A stretch of 63,204 nt of DNA, filler included, from Octopus bimaculoides (Eukaryota), in the NCBI RefSeq assembly GCF_001194135.2. It is 6 parts of 4 records of this genome, joined end to end, with 100 filler letters (N's around TTAATTAATTAA, not from the genome) between each part and the next. Parts side by side here need not be neighbours in the genome. Positions count along the whole stretch, not along the records: positions 56,203 to 63,204 come from NC_068993.1; 5 more parts are not named here. One strand, 5' to 3'. Of this stretch, positions 56,014-63,204 are shown piece after piece. Made by a program: the position numbers and the translations under genes. The notes under the pieces are model-generated. The model did not search any database. It was not told the origin of the DNA and saw nothing but the letters and a program-made list of their open reading frames with translations. Each line of letters begins with the position of its first letter. Position 1 is the stretch's first letter.

Positions 56014-56538
56014 TTATTTAACTATATGTAAATATGGTTGGCTAAATACAATTTTCGTGTGCGTGAGTGTGGCTATGTGTATGTAATTGAATGGACGCTT
56101 ATNNNNNNNNNNNNNNNNNNNNNNNNNNNNNNNNNNNNNNNNNNNNTTAATTAATTAANNNNNNNNNNNNNNNNNNNNNNNNNNNNNNNNNNNNNNNNNN
56201 NNTATATGTATGTATATATATATATGCGTATATACATACCAACGCTAACGATGGATTTGAAATTTGAAATGATACCGACGGAGCACATGTTGAAAATTTT
56301 GAATCAAGATTCCACGTAAATTTTTGACGTACGATTCCTAAATCTATTAGTTTTAGTTTCATAGTTAAGTAACAGACACAGAATTCTGTCAAAATTTGAA
56401 AAAAATTTGCTCGATTTCGTTGAAATAGTTGGTTTATTCTGGCACACGCTGTATATTTATTGAACAAGATAATAACAGCCTCTCCTCATTAAATTAACGT
56501 CGTATTATTATGGTTAACGTTACTGTGGTTAAACTTAC

Positions 56539-56646
56539 CTCACTGTTTCCTTCGTCGTAACGGAGTACTCTCCGCCTAGTTCTTTCGTTGTCATTTCCAT
56601 TTCGTTAGTTAAAGATTCATTCCGATCACTACTCTGAGAATCTTCG
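56539..56646 (-). CDS. Internal exon, repeat copy 1: (S)EDSQSSDRNESLTNEMEMTTKELGGEYSVTTKETV
   Basis: TTCGTTTCAG|C...AG|GTAAGT; 108 nt, phase 2-2, no stop. Confidence 0.72.
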
Positions 56647-58065
56647 CTGAAACGAATAGATATATACATGTTTGAATGAAAGTCCACGTGTGTATGCATA
56701 CAGGTATGTATGTATGTATGCATGCATGCATGTATGTATGTATGTAGGTTTGTATGTACGTATGTATGTATGTATGTATGTTTGTATGTATACATGCACT
56801 CATGTGTGTATGTATCTATGTATGTATGTACGTATGTATGTATGTATGTATGTATGTATGCATGTATGTACGTATGTATGTATGTATATATGCATCTATT
56901 TGTGTATGTATGTCTGTATGTATATTTGTATGCACGTATGCATTTATGTACGAATGCATACACAACTTATACCTTTTACTTGTTGCAGTCATTTGAATGC
57001 GGCTGCGGAGGAGGGCAGTCCTGAAGCGTTTTTTTAATAAAAAAAATTGGAACTCAGGACTTATTTTTCACCTATTATTCGAACGGTGTATTTTACCGAA
57101 CTTCTAAGATAAGAAACAGGAAACTCACCAACAGGAATTGCCAAGCAATGGTAGTGAAGGTACAAAAACAGACAGAAAGACAAATACACACACACACACA
57201 CACACACACACGCACGCACTCAGACACAGACACACTCATACCCACACACTCAGTGGGAGTGATATAATCGTAGAAAGGGTGACAAAGTGACAGTGAGGTA
57301 AACACATATTGGGTATGGAAGGGTTTGCCATGAGGAAATCGAAAAATCACAGATGTACAGAAATTGAAAGATCTTTTCTGTTGATTTCACAGATTATGAA
57401 ACTTTAAAATTAAGTCAAAATTTTCAAATTTGGTATATTGATGTACTTTTCCACGCTGAATCATTTATTCCTGAGTGGTGAATAATAGACATTGGTTGAT
57501 GGTGACAGAGAGAAAGGGATTTGTAGATGTAAGTGTTGAGTTACTCGTAGAAAATAAGAATCATTAATGCCTAGTTGAGGATGACATTGCCTATGGAAAG
57601 CAGATTACGAAAATTAAATTTGTTTTTCACACAAAGGCACTGCTTCGCTGCTTTTCGGGGCAAAACACACATGCATAACTATATGCTACGTATTTCTATT
57701 GTACACACACACACACATATAAATAAATGATATTTATGTATAATATACATGTGAGTATATACATAGGAATGCTAACGATGGATTTGAAATTTGAAATGAT
57801 ACCGACGGAGCATATGTTGAAAACTTTGAATCAAGATTTCACGTAAATTTTTGACGTACGATTTATAAATCTATTAGTTTTACTTTCATACTTAAGTAAC
57901 AGACACACAATTCTGTCAGATTTCAAAGAAAATTTGCCCGACTTCATTGAAATAGATGGTTAATTCTGGCACACCCTGTATATTTATTGAACAAGATAAT
58001 AACAACCTCTCCTCATTAAATTAACGTCGTATTATTATGGTTAACGTTACTGTAGTTAAACTTAC

Positions 58066-58173
58066 CTCACTGTTTCCTTCGTCGTAACGGAGTACTCTCC
58101 GCCTAGTTCTTCCGTTGTCATTTCCATTTCGTTAGTTAAAGATTCATTCCGATCACTACTCTGAGAATCTTCG
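58066..58173 (-). CDS. Internal exon, repeat copy 2: (S)EDSQSSDRNESLTNEMEMTTEELGGEYSVTTKETV
   Basis: TTCGTTTCAG|...AG|GTAAGT; 108 nt, phase 2-2, no stop. Confidence 0.72.
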
Positions 58174-59125
58174 CTGAAACGAATAGATATATACATGTTT
58201 GAATGAAAGCCCACGTGTGTATGCATACAGGTATGTATGTATGTGTGTATGTATGTATGTATGTATGTATGTATTTATGTATCTATGTATGTGTGTATGC
58301 CAGTTTCGAAATATATGTGTATGTGAGTGTTTGTGAGTGTTTATGTGAGTATTTGAAAGTGTGTCTATTTCTGAACGTGTGTGTGTATATATATTCACAT
58401 ACACACACATGTCCTCCACATGTTTGTGAGTGTGTATGTGAGTATTTGAAAGTGTGTGTCTATTTCTGAACGTGTGTGTGTATATATATTCACATACACA
58501 CACATGTCCACCAGAACGCACACACTCACATGCAGAGTAATATACACACACACACAACACGTAAACACCCACACACACAAACAGCCACACACAAACACAC
58601 ACACACAAACACACACACATAGACACACTCACATCTATATAGGTATATACATATAAATAGATGATATTTGTGCATATTATACATGTTCGTATATACATGG
58701 CAGCGCTAACGGTAGATTTCAAAATTTGCAGTAATATAGACGGAGTACATGTTGAATGTTTGACGTAAGATTTCACGTATAAATAGATTATACTTTTGTA
58801 TAATATACATGTGCGTATATACATACGAATGCTAACGATGGATTTGAAATTTGAAATGATACAGGCGGAGCACATGTTGAGAATTTTGAAACAAGATTTC
58901 ACGTAAATTTTTGACGTACGATTTATAAATCTATTAGTGTTAGTTTTATAGTTAAGTAACAGACACATAATTCTGTCGGAACTGGAAAAAAATTTGCCCG
59001 ATTTCATTGAAATAGATGGTTAATTCTGGCACACCCTGTATATTTATTGAACAAGATAATAACGGCGTAGTCTCATTAAATTAACGTCGTATTATTATGG
59101 TTAACGTTACTGTGGTTAAACTTAC

Positions 59126-59233
59126 CTCACTGTTTTCTTCGTCGTAACGGGGTCCTCTTTGCTTAAATCTTTCGTTGTCATTTCCATTTCGTTAGTTAAA
59201 GATTCATTCCGTTCACTACTCTGAGAATCTTCG
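59126..59233 (-). CDS. Internal exon, repeat copy 3: (S)EDSQSSERNESLTNEMEMTTKDLSKEDPVTTKKTV
   Basis: TTCGTTTCAG|...AG|GTAAGT; 108 nt, phase 2-2, no stop. Confidence 0.72.
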
Positions 59234-59413
59234 CTGAAACGAATAGATATATACATGTTTGAATGAAAGCCTACGTGTGTATGCACACAGGTATGTATGT
59301 TATCAATCAGTTTCATTTCTGTATTTATTGTCAATAGAGAAAGAGCCGGACTCTAACATAGATTCAAGGCTCCTTCATTGGAGCTTTTATGAACATCATC
59401 TAGGTATTTGTGC

Positions 59414-59449
<36 letters not shown>

Positions 59450-59453
<4 letters not shown>

Positions 59454-61287
59454 TTTGGTGTTAGTGTATGCGCAGATTTGTATGTTTGATTTATGGATGC
59501 ATTTTTATGTATATATTTTCATATCTAGATGCATGCGTATGTATTTATGTGCTAATTTTTTGGAAAGTTTTACATATCTTTACTTTTCTATTGATGGCTT
59601 GAATCTGTAGTCTTCTAATCAGGCTTTTTCTTTCAGGTTTTGAGAACCCTAGTTTTTCCAGGATTTTGTTGAGGCAGTTCGTTACATATCCCAATGCCTC
59701 AACAACCACGGGTATGAATCTGAACTTGTAGTCTGTGTGGAGTATCTGCAAATTTCTCAGTATCTTGGCGTAGTTGTTCTCCTTTTCTCTAATCTTTAGT
59801 GTGATGTTGACATCCGCGGGACAGCTGATTTCTACTACTGTACAAAGTTTCTCTTCTCTGTCCCAGATTACTATATCCGGTCTATTATGTCTGCATTTTA
59901 TAGAGGTTTTTGTTGGGACATTCCACCAATACTCTTTCATATTGTGAGTGGTAATGGCCTCTACCTCATTAAGGGTTTTCATCTCCTTAGCCTCGGGGTT
60001 ACCCTGTCGGCGGATTTCATTGTACAGTGTTTTGGCCACAACATCATGTCTCATAGGTAGGTAATACCGTGATGACATTTTTGGACAGCTGCTGATGATG
60101 TGGGTGATATCTTCGATACTGATGCCACAGAGTCTGAATAGGTTATTACATTGTGGCGCTTTGCCCGCCTCTCTGTCCCGTTTGTTTATTAGGAATTTGG
60201 TTGCTATTTCTTGTTCTTGAATAGCAAAGGCATACCCTTCAAAGTGAGAGCTGGTGACCCGATTGTTTGTCCACGATAGACTGCTCTGGTTGTCAATGTT
60301 GTTATCACTCTGGAGCTTNNNNNNNNNNNNNNNNNNNNNNNNNNNNNNNNNNNNNNNNNNNNNNNNNNNNNNNNNNNNNNNNNNNNNNNNNNNNNNNNNN
60401 NNNNNNNNNNNNNNNNNNNNNNNNNNNNNNNNNNNNNNNNNNNNNNNNNNNNNNNNNNNNNNNNNNNNNNNNNNNNNNNNNNNNNNNNNNNNNNNNNNNN
60501 NNNNNNNNNNNNNNNNNNNNNNNNNNNNNNNNNNNNNNNNNNNNNNNNNNNNNNNNNNNNNNNNNNNNNNNNNNNNNNNNNNNNNNNNNNNNNNNNNNNN
60601 NNNNNNNNNNNNNNNNNNNNNNNNNNNNNNNNNNNNNNNNNNNNNNNNNNNNNNNNNNNNNNNNNNNNNNNNNNNNNNNNNNNNNNNNNNNNNNNNNNNN
60701 NNNNNNNNNNNNNNNNNNNNNNNNNNNNNNNNNNNNNNNNNNNNNNNNNNNNNNNNNNNNNNNNNNNNNNNNNNNNNNNNNNNNNNNNNNNNNNNNNNNN
60801 NNNNNNNNNNNNNNNNNNNNNNNNNNNNNNNNNNNNNNNNNNNNNNNNNNNNNNNNNNNNNNNNNNNNNNNNNNNNNNNNNNNNNNNNNNNNNNNNNNNN
60901 NNNNNNNNNNNNNNNNNNNNNNNNNNNNNNNNNNNNNNNNNNNNNNNNNNNNNNNNNNNNNNNNNNNNNNNNNNNNNNNNNNNNNNNNNNNNNNNNNNNN
61001 NNNNNNNNNNNNNNNNNNNNNNNNNNNNNNNNNNNNNNNNNNNNNNNNNNNNNNNNNNNNNNNNNNNNNNNNNNNNNNNNNNNNNNNNNNNNNNNNNNNN
61101 NNNNNNNNNNNNNNNNNNNNNNNNNNNNNNNNNNNNNNNNNNNNNNNNNNNNNNNNNNNNNNNNNNNNNNNNNNNNNNNNNNNNNNNNNNNNNNNNNNNN
61201 NNNNNNNNNNNNNNNNNNNNNNNNNNNNNNNNTGGTGTTTCTGTTTGCCTGCGCTCCAATTAGATACCCTTCATACTTCTTCAGCAT
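59450..61287 (-). mobile_element. Young 5'-truncated R4/Dong-like non-LTR retrotransposon in an intron of the array
   Basis: 257 open codons (60318-59548): FEGYAFAIQEQEIATK, FRLC..EDITHIISSC (zinc knuckle), RHDVVAK, WWNVP, RHNRPDIVIWD..VVEISCP..REKENNY, IPVVVEALG (RLE). Across the gap, LKKYEGYLIGAQANRNT (61286-61232) resembles the linker before the RT LF(V/M)DD motif. Confidence 0.92.
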
Positions 61288-62334
61288 GTGTGTATGTATG
61301 TATGTATGTATGCATGTATGTATGTATGTATGTATGTATGTATGTATGTATGTATATATGTATGTATGCATCTATTTGTGTATATATATGTGTGTATGTA
61401 TATTTGTATGAACGTATGCATTATTTTCGAATGCATACAAAACTTATACCTTTTACTTGATGCAGTCATTTGAATGCCGCTGCGGAGGAGGACAGGCTTG
61501 AAGCGTTTTTTATTTGGAAAAAAATCGAACTCAGGACTTATTTTTCTCTTATTATTCGAACAGTGTATTTTACCGAACCTCTAAGATAAGAGAAAGGAAA
61601 CTCACCAACAGCAATTGTCAAGCAATGGTAGTGAAGGGACAACACACACAGAAAGACACACACACACGCACAAACACACACACTCACACACACACACACG
61701 CGCACACACACACACACACACACTCACACACTCACACACACATGTACATACTACACTTTATCGTGCAGTTACTGTTAATACTTCATTTAGAGAATTAACA
61801 TTGCTTGTTTTCACCTTTTCAATATCAGTGAAGAATTTCACTGGAAAAGAAGATATAAGTTTGCCAGGTTTTTGTCTCTCTCACCAAAACTACGTCAAAA
61901 GTACTGAACGGATCTTTATNNNNNNNNNNNNNNNNNNNNNNNNNNNNNNNNNNNNNNNNNNNNNNNNNNNNNNNNNNNNNNNNNNNNNNNNNNNNNNNNN
62001 NNNNNNNNNNNNNNNNNNNNNNNNNNNNNNNNNNNNNNNNNNNNNNNNNNNNNNNNNNNNNNNNNNNNNNNNNNNNNNNNNNNNNNNNNNNNNNNNNNNN
62101 NNNNNNNNNNNNNNNNNNNNNNNNNNNNNNNNNNNNNNNNNNNNNNNNNNNNNNNNNNNNNNNNNNNNNNNNNNNNNNNNNNNNNNNNNNNNNNNNNNNN
62201 NNNNNNNNNNNNNNNNNNNNNNNNNNNNNNNNNNNNNNNNNNNNNNNNNNNNNNNNNNNNNNNNNNNNNNNNNNNNNNNNNNNNNNNNNNNNNNNNNNNN
62301 NNNNNNNNNNNNNNNNNTATGTATATATATATAT

Positions 62335-62365
<31 letters not shown>

Positions 62366-62721
62366 CATACACATATAAATAGATGATATTTGTGTATAAT
62401 ATACATGTGCGTATATACATACCAACGCTGACAATGGATTTGAAAATTGAAATGATACAGACGGAGCAGATGTTGAAAATTCTGACGCCAGATTTCACGT
62501 AAACTTTTGACGTACGATTTATAAATCTATTAGTTTTAGCTTCATAGTTAAGTAACAAATAGAAAATTCTGTCAGAATTGGAAAAAAAGTTGCCCGATTT
62601 CATTGAAATAGATGATTAATTCTGGCACACCCTGTATATTCATTGAACAAGATAATAACGGCGTTGTCTCACTAAATTAACGTCGTACTAATATGGTTAA
62701 CGTTACTGTGGTTAAAATTAC

Positions 62722-62829
62722 CTCACGGTTTCCTTTGTCGTAACGGAGTCCTCTCTGCTTAAATCTTTCGTTGTCATTTCCATTTCGTTAGTTAAAGATT
62801 CATTCCGTTCACTACTCTGAGAATCTTCG
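62722..62829 (-). CDS. Internal exon, repeat copy 4: (S)EDSQSSERNESLTNEMEMTTKDLSREDSVTTKETV
   Basis: TTCGTTTCAG|...AG|GTAATT; 108 nt, phase 2-2, no stop. Confidence 0.7.
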
Positions 62830-63153
62830 CTGAAACGAATAGATATATACATGTTTGAATGAAAGCCTACGTGTGTATGCACACAGGTATGTATGTTATC
62901 AATCAGTTTCATTTCTGTATTTATTGTCAATAGAGAAAGAGCCGGACTCTAACATAGATTCAAGGCTCCTTCATTGGAACTTTTATGAACATCATCTAGG
63001 TATTTGTGCACATGTGTGTGTGTGTGTGTACAGGACTTATTTTTCATCTATTATTCGAACGGTGTATTTTACCGAACTTCTAAGATCAGAGACAGGAATC
63101 TCACCAACAGCAATTGTGAAGCAATAGTAGTGAAGGGACAACCGCATAGAGAA

Positions 63154-63204
<51 letters not shown>

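What the first reader, a model, noticed from the sequence alone, without database searches (positions are those of the whole stretch)
56539..62829. Repeat protein assembled from tandemly duplicated 108-nt symmetric exons
Four minus-strand copies (62829-62722, 59233-59126, 58173-58066, 56646-56539) each sit between TTTCAG and GTAA(G/T)T, are exactly 108 nt, phase 2-2, and have no indels or stops, while the flanking intron copies contain indels and microsatellite changes. Spliced together (AG|C = Ser) they give 36-aa Ser/Thr/Glu/Asp-rich repeats, each with an N-E-S glycosylation sequon and S-x-E / S-x-S motifs of the type used by FAM20C. Inference: an extracellular mucin-like stalk or acidic phospho/glycoprotein whose length can change by exon skipping or unit copy number without frameshift. 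I do not recognise the gene. An ORF finder or annotation pipeline would see only microsatellite-padded ORFs here.
Basis: partly seen in the sequence, partly recalled or inferred. Interest (0 to 1): 0.8.

Follow-up and report, generated by a model that had tools for sequence, protein, structure and literature searches.

The report
Tandem exon-like 108-nt cassettes, orphan peptide
A 1–1.5 kb stretch carrying one exon-like 108-base cassette has been duplicated in tandem at least four times; the copies look like in-frame cassette exons for an acidic Ser/Thr/Glu-rich repeat, but no related protein exists in any database searched and no selection on the protein can be shown, so this is a plausible, fairly ordinary and unproven unannotated repeat gene.

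Summary
Four minus-strand copies lie at the stated coordinates. Each is 108 nt, bounded by tttcag| and |gtaa(g/t)t, and open only in the phase 2-2 frame.

- **For exons:** three donors are the three best of 869 GT sites in the piece. A random 500-nt core gives an equally good symmetric open exon in about 3 of 10,000 trials. The cassette is a purine- and GC-rich island with purines enriched at codon position 1.
56 nt upstream and 336 nt downstream are also free of indels. About 10 nonsynonymous and 3 synonymous changes fit neutrality. Staying stop-free is uninformative (P = 0.56). Conservation is a mosaic that ignores the exon borders, which points to gene conversion.
- **Peptide:** it has no relative in 1.84 billion representative or 5.8 billion clustered proteins, Pfam, PDB or metagenome contigs. 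With 0.7% Pro it is not mucin-like, and S-x-E occurs in only two of four units.
- **Gaps:** both lie in putative introns between copies 1 and 2. One cuts a retrotransposon fragment.

Verdict: a probable (about 0.55) tandem exon duplication in an unannotated gene. The mucin, extracellular and FAM20C readings are unsupported. Interest is low to moderate.

The parts
62722..62829 (-). E1: 108-nt exon-like cassette (SEDSQSSERNESLTNEMEMTTKDLSREDSVTTKETV). The donor is weakened (gtaatt).
   Evidence: (acceptor 7.25 bits, donor 6.85 bits)
59126..59233 (-). E2: 108-nt exon-like cassette (…KDLSKEDPVTTKKTV). The donor is GAG|gtaagt.
   Evidence: (donor 11.78 bits, joint best in the piece)
58066..58173 (-). 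E3: 108-nt exon-like cassette (…SSDRNES…TTEELGGEYSVTTKETV).
56539..56646 (-). E4: 108-nt exon-like cassette. It differs from E3 at one base (K/E).
56647..56713 (-). Conserved 67-nt acceptor-side flank, with possible branch site and polypyrimidine tract. Its counterparts are 58174-58240, 59234-59300 and 62830-62896, at 95-97% identity. Together with the first 60 nt of the cassette it is the most conserved tract of the unit.
   Evidence: (4 variable columns in 116 against 63 in 337 in the intron, p=1.5e-5)
57714..58065 (-). Conserved donor-side intron block of about 350 nt. Its counterparts are 62370-62721, 58774-59125 and 56203-56538, at 87.5-91% identity with no indels.
   Evidence: (families D4, D6)
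62757..63029 (-). Near-identical tract shared by E1 and E2 (counterpart 59161-59433). It has 1 difference in about 200 nt upstream and 0 in the first 73 nt of the cassette, and it ends inside the cassette. Read as a gene-conversion or recent-recombination tract.
   Evidence: 99.5% over 200 nt
56810..57252 (-). Second shared block of the unit: (GT)n, a 230-nt element (family D8) and (CATA)n. Its counterparts are 61286-61734 (87%) and, in part, 63031-63204 (87-88%). It may be an old SINE-like insertion that was duplicated along with the unit.
   Evidence: (D8)
59545..60318 (-). 3' fragment of a retroelement ORF inserted between E1 and E2, cut by the gap. Its relatives carry RVT_1 or zf-RVT domains. 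It is not part of the repeat gene.
   Evidence: no Pfam or PDB hit for the fragment itself
60319..61232 (.). Assembly gap inside the retroelement insertion. By analogy with the E4 unit, a further cassette could lie hidden here.
61920..62317 (.). Assembly gap in the intron downstream of E1, starting in a (TA)n run. The sequence beyond it (61919-61735) has no counterpart in the other units.
58652..58905 (.). 126-nt tandem duplication inside the E2 intron block. This is one of the real 'intron indels'.

Best explanation
The locus is a local tandem duplication array with at least four units, spaced 1.06, 1.53 and 3.6 kb apart. The unit consists of a (GT)n run, a 230-nt element, a (CATA)n or (CA)n run, a 67-nt acceptor flank, the 108-nt cassette and a 350-nt intron block.

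SHOWN: the array exists. Its copies fall into two subtypes, E1/E2 and E3/E4. Identity is mosaic, the clearest case being a 273-nt near-identical E1/E2 tract that ends inside the cassette.

INFERRED (mechanism of origin): the array grew by unequal crossing-over between microsatellite-rich flanks and is being partly homogenised by gene conversion.

INFERRED (most likely function): the 108-nt cassettes are, or recently were, internal phase 2-2 cassette exons of an unannotated, lineage-restricted gene on the minus strand. Spliced in series, each adds a 36-aa acidic Ser/Thr/Glu-rich module. The product has pI about 4.1 and is probably a charged, largely disordered, phosphorylatable spacer. Because the exons are symmetric, skipping one or changing copy number changes the length without a frameshift.

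NOT SHOWN: transcription, splicing, selection at the protein level, and the location or function of the product.
For: - Coordinates, length, borders and frame.
- Donors: those of E2-E4 score 11.8 bits and are the only three sites at or above 10 bits among 869 GT sites on both strands. The acceptor scores 7.25 bits, which places it among the 15 of 261 minus-strand AG sites at or above 6 bits. A scan for symmetric open candidate exons in the piece returns only these three (E1's donor falls below the threshold) plus one inside the retroelement.
- Chance: an equally good configuration arose in 0.03% of 20,000 random 500-nt cores.
- Composition: the cassette is a sharp island, with purines at 0.63-0.70 against 0.37-0.57 in the flanks and GC at 0.41-0.44 against about 0.30. 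Purines are enriched at codon position 1 (29/35 against 42/70, p=0.026).
- Constraint: the acceptor flank plus the first 60 nt of the cassette is significantly more conserved than the intron (4/116 against 63/337 variable columns, p=1.5e-5).
- Unit map and mosaic identity.
- Transposon features: no terminal inverted repeats and no transposon ORF inside the unit.
- Precedent: internal tandem duplication of symmetric exons that encode disordered segments is a documented, common route to repeat proteins (PMC3632108).
Against: - No protein anywhere resembles the peptide. There were 0 hits at E<=10 among 5.8 billion clusters, 0 at E<=0.001 among 1.84 billion representatives, and none in Pfam, PDB or the metagenome scans.
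- No codon-level constraint is visible. Pairwise pN/pS runs from 0.36 to 2.25. Seven of the 12 variable sites are at codon position 1 and four at position 3. The last 48 nt vary as fast as the intron (23% against 19% variable columns).
- An open frame and an absence of indels are both expected by chance at this divergence.
- The conserved tract straddles the intron/exon border, so it is not specific to coding sequence.
- The E1 donor has lost the +5 G.
- My splice matrices use vertebrate-like frequencies recalled from memory, not this organism's own.
- The four copies amount to one independent observation.
Confidence: 0.55

Rival explanations
1. The array is a non-coding tandem repeat (a macrosatellite of 1-1.5 kb units), perhaps lying in an intron or intergenic DNA. 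Its ancestral unit happened to carry an open 36-codon stretch between an AG and a GTAAGT, or its cassettes are exons of a non-coding RNA. No protein is made.
For: - Substitutions fit neutrality, and codon position 1 varies most.
- No homologue exists in any protein collection.
- The near flanks are as free of indels as the cassette.
- The in-frame stop right after the cassette is simply the TAA of gTAAgt, and the frame upstream stays open only because (CATA)n has no stops.
- The four copies are one independent event.
Against: - The chance of so good a symmetric open exon is about 3e-4 per 500-nt core.
- The donors are the best three sites in the piece.
- The cassette is a purine/GC island with period-3 purine bias.
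- The acceptor flank plus the 5' half of the cassette is conserved well above the intron level.
Confidence: 0.22
2. The ancestral cassette is a real exon, but the copies are not all used in series. Either they are alternative (mutually exclusive or individually skipped) versions of one exon, or some are young duplicates drifting towards pseudo-exons.
For: - The E1 donor is degraded from gtaagt to gtaatt (6.9 against 11.8 bits).
- The 3' half of the cassette diverges at the neutral rate, mostly by amino-acid changes.
- Tandemly duplicated exons are often used as mutually exclusive alternatives (abstracts of PMC9013439 and PMC9741552).
Against: - A length divisible by three gives no frame-based exclusivity.
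- Introns of at least 950 nt rule out steric exclusion.
- Three of the four copies keep perfect signals.
- Splicing cannot be tested here.
Confidence: 0.15
3. The cassette with its flanks is part of a dispersed transposable element that landed or amplified here.
For: - The neighbourhood is rich in repeats: a retroelement fragment, a possibly SINE-like 230-nt element present in three copies and many microsatellites.
Against: - The copies are head-to-tail on one strand and carry the same long flanks, which is the pattern of segmental tandem duplication.
- There are no terminal inverted repeats.
- No element-type ORF lies in the unit.
- The peptide matches no transposon protein.
- The source genome could not be searched, so dispersal is untested.
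Confidence: 0.05

Closest known systems
Internal tandem duplication of symmetric exons encoding disordered repeat regions (general class; Schad et al. 2013, PMC3632108)
   Same: The cassettes are adjacent, homologous exon-like segments of one phase class, with a length divisible by three. They encode a low-hydrophobicity charged sequence, and duplicated intron sequence travels with the exon.
   Different: Here splicing and expression are unproven. The phase is 2-2. The copies are very young (87-99% identical including introns) and show no measurable protein-level constraint.
Treacle (TCOF1) and Nopp140 (NOLC1) central repeats: acidic Ser/Glu/Asp clusters, with roughly one exon per repeat in TCOF1 (from my own knowledge, not tested here)
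   Same: The repeats are acidic and Ser-rich, with many [ST]-x-x-[DE] casein-kinase-2-type sites (12 in 144 aa). They are modular, with one exon per repeat.
   Different: There is no sequence similarity. The treacle and Nopp140 repeats alternate acidic and basic blocks and are longer. Nothing indicates a nucleolar location here.
Secretory calcium-binding phosphoproteins / SIBLINGs (FAM20C substrates; PMC3632108)
   Same: They are acidic, disordered and built from duplicated symmetric exons. S-x-E motifs occur in E1 and E2.
   Different: That family is built from class 0,0 modules (PMC3632108), whereas this array is phase 2-2. S-x-E is absent from E3 and E4. No signal peptide is known, and there is no homology.
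Mucin PTS (Pro/Thr/Ser) tandem-repeat domains
   Same: Both are rich in Ser and Thr (34%) and are tandem repeats whose number could vary.
   Different: Pro is 0.7% and Glu+Asp 26%. From my own knowledge, mucin repeats are usually encoded in one large exon rather than one exon per repeat. There is no evidence of secretion.
Titin PEVK and nebulin repeat exons (from my own knowledge)
   Same: These also have many short symmetric exons, each encoding one roughly 28-36-aa module, amplified by tandem duplication and differentially skipped.
   Different: There is no sequence similarity and the composition differs (no PEVK or SDxxYK motifs). Only four copies are seen here.

Membership tests
Tandemly duplicated symmetric cassette exons | Two or more adjacent homologous segments on one strand, duplicated together with flanking intron | tested here: met
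   There are four copies. The flanks are 87.5-97% identical over 67 nt upstream and about 350 nt downstream.
Tandemly duplicated symmetric cassette exons | Canonical AG...GT borders with a credible polypyrimidine tract and donor consensus | tested here: met
   The acceptor scores 7.25 bits in all four copies. The donor scores 11.8 bits in E2-E4 (the best three of 869 GT sites) and 6.9 bits in E1. The matrices are vertebrate-like and recalled from memory.
Tandemly duplicated symmetric cassette exons | Length divisible by 3, same phase at both ends, frame open through the joined copies | tested here: met
   Each copy is 108 nt and phase 2-2. The junction codon is AGC, and the 144 joined codons contain no stop.
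Tandemly duplicated symmetric cassette exons | Evidence of selection on the encoded protein (synonymous excess, third-position bias) | tested here: not met
   There are about 10 nonsynonymous and 3 synonymous changes against a 240:60 expectation. Pairwise pN/pS is 0.36-2.25, and position 1 varies most. The numbers are small, so this fails to show constraint without proving its absence. The first 20 codons are nearly invariant, but so is the adjoining intron.
Tandemly duplicated symmetric cassette exons | Spliced transcripts containing the cassettes | not testable with these tools
   No transcriptome or source genome is available. The protein collections, some of which derive from public sequencing runs, hold nothing similar.
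Mucin (PTS domain) | Pro/Thr/Ser-dominated repeats | tested here: not met
   Pro 0.7%, Pro+Thr+Ser 35%, Glu 19%, Asp 7%, net charge -24 in 144 aa.
Mucin (PTS domain) | Signal peptide or secretory context | not testable with these tools
   The piece contains no other exon of the gene.
FAM20C-substrate secreted acidic phosphoproteins (SCPP/SIBLING) | S-x-E motifs recurring in the repeats | tested here: not met
   S-x-E is present in E1 and E2 only, at 4 sites. E3 and E4 have none.
FAM20C-substrate secreted acidic phosphoproteins (SCPP/SIBLING) | Gene built from phase 0,0 modules (as described in PMC3632108) | tested here: not met
   The cassettes are phase 2-2.
Mutually exclusive exon cluster | A mechanism that enforces one-of-N choice (frame incompatibility, very short intron, competing RNA pairing) | tested here: inconclusive
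   Frame incompatibility is excluded (108 = 3 x 36), and so is steric exclusion (introns of at least 950 nt). Competing RNA structures were not examined.
Dispersed transposable element | Terminal repeats, element-encoded ORF, copies at unrelated loci | tested here: inconclusive
   The unit has no inverted terminal repeats and no element ORF. Copies at unrelated loci could not be tested without the source genome, and the two metagenome scans found nothing.
Reverse-transcriptase-encoding retroelement (applies only to 59545-60318) | Homology to ORFs that carry reverse-transcriptase domains | tested here: met
   There are 49 relatives with E down to 5e-97. Some carry PF00078 (RVT_1) or PF13966 (zf-RVT), and they include Octopus bimaculoides LOC106878562 at 62% identity. 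The window holds only the part C-terminal to the RT and is cut by the gap.

The most novel reading that the evidence does not exclude
This may be a lineage-restricted orphan gene caught while it is being built. A single 108-nt cassette exon would be amplifying in situ by unequal recombination between microsatellite-rich introns, with gene conversion holding the acceptor and the N-terminal half of each 36-aa module constant while the C-terminal half diversifies. The product would be an acidic repeat protein of variable length. The AlphaFold single-sequence model suggests two beta-strands per module, but no control could be run.
Probability: 0.3. Interest if true: 0.4.

Novelty: new member of a known kind. 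Interest (0 to 1): 0.25.

Why it matters
If the cassettes are expressed, this is an unannotated gene that ORF finders and homology-based annotation would miss. It would also be a clean, very young example of how a repeat protein grows one exon at a time, with the recombination substrate (microsatellites) and a conversion tract still visible. That would be useful as an illustration and for improving gene models, but the mechanism is already well documented. It opens no long-standing question, and the protein's role is unknown.

Tried and rejected
1. Protein homology. The word-indexed search of 5.8 billion clusters at E<=0.01 and again at E<=10 found nothing (one search was a parameter error). 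The exhaustive HMMER search of 1.84 billion representatives and the PDB sequence search also found nothing. Pfam gave seven matches, E 0.014-0.81, all below their gathering cut-offs.
2. JGI metagenome contigs. Back-translated peptide patterns and a 25-nt exact DNA word found nothing. No collection on hand holds the source animal genome, so these are weak negatives.
3. Rfam at a permissive threshold returned only sub-threshold miRNA, scaRNA, snoRNA and viral cis-element models, nearly all lying on microsatellites, and no tRNA was found. These were rejected as artefacts.
4. AlphaFold2 single-sequence model. Mean pLDDT was 70 with eight beta-strands. Foldseek against PDB gave no significant match; the best was the FapC amyloid at E=0.01 and TM 0.14. 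Perfect repeats are prone to over-confident beta predictions.
5. Continuity across the gaps. Retroelement homology stops at the gap edge and is absent on the far side. The 185 nt beyond the other gap has no counterpart in other units. This is unresolved.
6. From memory, the retroelement C-terminus (C-x2-C...H-x4-C, RHD, PD...E) resembled R2-type restriction-like endonuclease domains. The fragment itself gave no Pfam or PDB sequence support, so I do not claim it.
7. MITE-like inverted termini: none were found.
8. The literature search for a cephalopod acidic repeat protein returned nothing relevant.
Full report
**Scope and gaps.** Only 56203-63204 is real sequence. Everything before it is N apart from a 12-base linker. 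The two N runs, 60319-61232 and 61920-62317, do not touch any of the four claimed copies. Both lie between copy 1 and copy 2, in what would be intron. The long reading frames that the ORF lister reports across them are artefacts of N being read as X. I could not show continuity across either gap. Homology to retroelement proteins runs up to the edge of the first gap (59551-60318) and is absent on its far side. The 185 nt beyond the second gap (61919-61735) has no counterpart in the other units. Copy number is therefore 'at least four', and the E1-E2 adjacency is assumed.

**Observation.** The four minus-strand segments are exactly where stated: 62829-62722, 59233-59126, 58173-58066 and 56646-56539. 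Each is 108 nt, preceded by ...ctattcgtttcag and followed by gtaagt (gtaatt in E1). Each is open only in the frame starting at base 2; the other two frames hold 4-5 stops each. Joined in series the junction codon is AGC (Ser), and 144 codons read through. A 60-nt core pattern finds these four sites and no others, with 0 expected by chance.

**Structure of the locus.** The copies are the centre of a duplicated unit.
- Upstream, 67 nt are 95-97% identical in all copies.
- Downstream, about 350 nt are 87.5-91% identical with no indels.
- Further upstream, three units share a block made of (GT)n, a 230-nt element and a (CATA)n run, at about 87% identity.
- Spacing between copies is 3596, 1060 and 1527 nt. 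The differences come from microsatellites, a 126-nt and a 95-nt internal tandem duplication, about 420 nt of unique sequence in one unit, and a retroelement fragment plus the two gaps in another.
- There are two subtypes, E1/E2 and E3/E4.

This is a head-to-tail segmental array, not a set of independent insertions. No terminal inverted repeats bound the unit.

**Are the cassettes exons?** I scored every GT and AG in the piece with simple donor and acceptor matrices. The frequencies are vertebrate-like and come from my own memory, which is a caveat.
- The donors of E2-E4 (GAG|gtaagt, 11.8 bits) are the only three sites at or above 10 bits among 869 GT dinucleotides on both strands.
- The acceptor (7.25 bits) is among the 15 of 261 minus-strand AG sites that score 6 bits or more.
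- A scan for symmetric, open candidate exons returns only E2-E4 plus one inside the retroelement. E1's donor, at 6.9 bits, falls below the threshold.
- In 20,000 random 500-nt sequences with the unit's dinucleotide make-up, an equally good symmetric open exon on either strand arose in 0.03%.
- The cassette is a sharp compositional island. Purines are 0.63-0.70 against 0.37-0.57 in the flanks, and GC is 0.41-0.44 against about 0.30.
- Purines are enriched at codon position 1 (29/35 against 42/70 at the other positions, p=0.026).

These are the features expected of a real exon with purine-rich enhancers, and they are the main positive evidence. Because the four copies share one ancestor, they count as one observation.

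- The near flanks are as free of indels as the cassette.
- Among the copies, 12 columns vary: seven at codon position 1, one at position 2 and four at position 3.
- On a parsimony count there are about 10 nonsynonymous and 3 synonymous changes, against a neutral spectrum of 240:60.
- Pairwise pN/pS scatters from 0.36 to 2.25.
- Thirteen random substitutions would leave the frame open 56% of the time.

Conservation is mosaic and ignores the exon borders. The 56 nt upstream plus the first 60 nt of the cassette have 4 variable columns in 116, against 63 in 337 for the intron (p=1.5e-5). The last 48 nt of the cassette vary at the intron rate (11 in 48). E1 and E2 differ at one base in about 200 nt upstream and at none in the first 73 nt of the cassette. 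They then differ at 5 of the next 35 nt and at 9.5% in the intron. A breakpoint inside the cassette is the mark of gene conversion or recent unequal exchange.

The conserved tract could also reflect constraint on the acceptor, on splicing enhancers and on the N-terminal half of the module (SEDSQSS[ED]RNESLTNEMEMTT). The data cannot separate these explanations.

**The peptide.** Its composition is 19% Glu, 17% Ser, 17% Thr, 7% Asp and 0.7% Pro. The pI is 4.1, the net charge is -24 and GRAVY is -1.36. That describes a highly charged acidic sequence, not a Pro/Thr/Ser mucin domain.
- N-E-S is present in all four units, but it lies in the tract where almost every base is conserved.
- S-x-E is present only in E1 and E2.
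- There are twelve [ST]-x-x-[DE] sites.
- Nothing in the piece bears on secretion.

The peptide has no relative anywhere: Pfam, 5.8 billion clustered proteins at E<=0.01 and at E<=10, an exhaustive HMMER pass over 1.84 billion representatives, PDB sequences and metagenome contigs. The retroelement fragment in the same piece finds its best relatives at only about 61% identity. This suggests that the source genome's own ORFs are not in these collections, so the silence is weaker evidence than it looks. It still means that no annotated protein of any sampled species carries this repeat.

A single-sequence AlphaFold model gave two beta-strands per module at pLDDT 70, but Foldseek found nothing significant.

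**Mechanism.**
- *Shown:* a tandem array of units, each carrying one exon-like cassette, with mosaic identity.
- *Inferred:* growth by unequal crossing-over between microsatellite-rich flanks, with homogenisation by gene conversion.
- *Inferred, about 0.55:* the cassettes are internal phase 2-2 exons of an unannotated minus-strand gene, each adding a 36-aa acidic module. The symmetry means that skipping a copy or changing copy number keeps the frame.
- *Rivals:* a non-coding macrosatellite or non-coding-RNA exons (0.22); real ancestry but alternative use or decaying copies, in line with E1's weakened donor (0.15); a dispersed element (0.05).

**Comparison with known systems.** Internal tandem duplication of symmetric exons that encode disordered segments is a documented, frequent route to repeat proteins (PMC3632108). 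Duplicated exons are also often used as alternatives (PMC9013439 and PMC9741552). By function, the nearest analogues I can name are the treacle and Nopp140 acidic Ser clusters, the SCPP/SIBLING proteins, and the titin PEVK or nebulin exon arrays. None shares sequence with this peptide. The SCPP hallmark of phase 0,0 modules and the mucin hallmark of Pro/Thr/Ser composition were both tested and not met.

**Verdict.** The claimed evidence of selection and the mucin/FAM20C/extracellular reading are unsupported. This is a probable new member of a well-known kind, and it needs transcript data and the source genome to settle. Interest 0.25.

Noticed in passing
window 59545-60318 (-): A 257-codon open frame ends at a stop and is cut at its 5' side by the gap. 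It is the C-terminal part of a retroelement ORF. It has 49 relatives (E down to 5e-97, at most 61-64% identity over most of its length), some of which carry RVT_1 or zf-RVT domains. They include Octopus bimaculoides LOC106878562 and a Hydractinia protein. The fragment itself matches no Pfam family and no PDB sequence. It contains C-x2-C...H-x4-C, RHD and PD...E motifs that reminded me of R2-type endonuclease domains, but this is not verified.
   Followed up: partly
protein P0026: A relative of this animal-type retroelement ORF (46% identity, full coverage, zf-RVT domain) is deposited as a hypothetical protein of a 'Pseudomonadota bacterium' MAG on an 1132-nt contig. It is probably eukaryotic contamination in that bin.
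   Followed up: no
window 56944-57165, 61421-61642, 63040-63141: A 230-nt element (family D8, 87-89% identity) is flanked by (GT/CA)n on one side and (CATA)n on the other. Read on the + strand it ends in a (CA)n run and could be an old SINE-like insertion that was duplicated with the unit. The copy upstream of E1 is truncated at ...aaataagtcctg. ARAGORN and Rfam find no tRNA-like part.
   Followed up: partly
window 58328-58513 and 58652-58905: Two local tandem duplications (95 nt x2 at 95% identity, 126 nt x2 at 79%) lie inside the E2-E3 interval. They show that the region is prone to small-scale as well as unit-scale duplication.
   Followed up: no
window 56694-56962, 58233-58301, 61306-61374: Rfam models mir-297, mir-466, mir-3149 and others hit the (GTAT/CATA)n microsatellites with E down to 2e-9, but far below their gathering scores (60 against 90 bits). 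These are repeat-driven artefacts, not miRNA genes.
   Followed up: yes
window 61233-61285 (-): The 53 nt just before the large gap (gctgaagaagtatgaagggtatctaattggagcgcaggcaaacagaaacacca) interrupt the (CATA)n run at the point where, in the E4 unit, the acceptor flank and cassette follow. This may be the 5' junction of the insertion, but it shows no retroelement homology with the relatives available.
   Followed up: partly
spliced peptide, model mb88304d1c701: AlphaFold2 without an alignment predicts two long beta-strands per 36-aa module (pLDDT 70, pTM 0.58). The first strand (SLTNEMEMTTK) alternates Leu/Asn/Met/Met/Thr with polar or charged residues. No control could be run, so this may be an artefact of the repeat.
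   Followed up: partly
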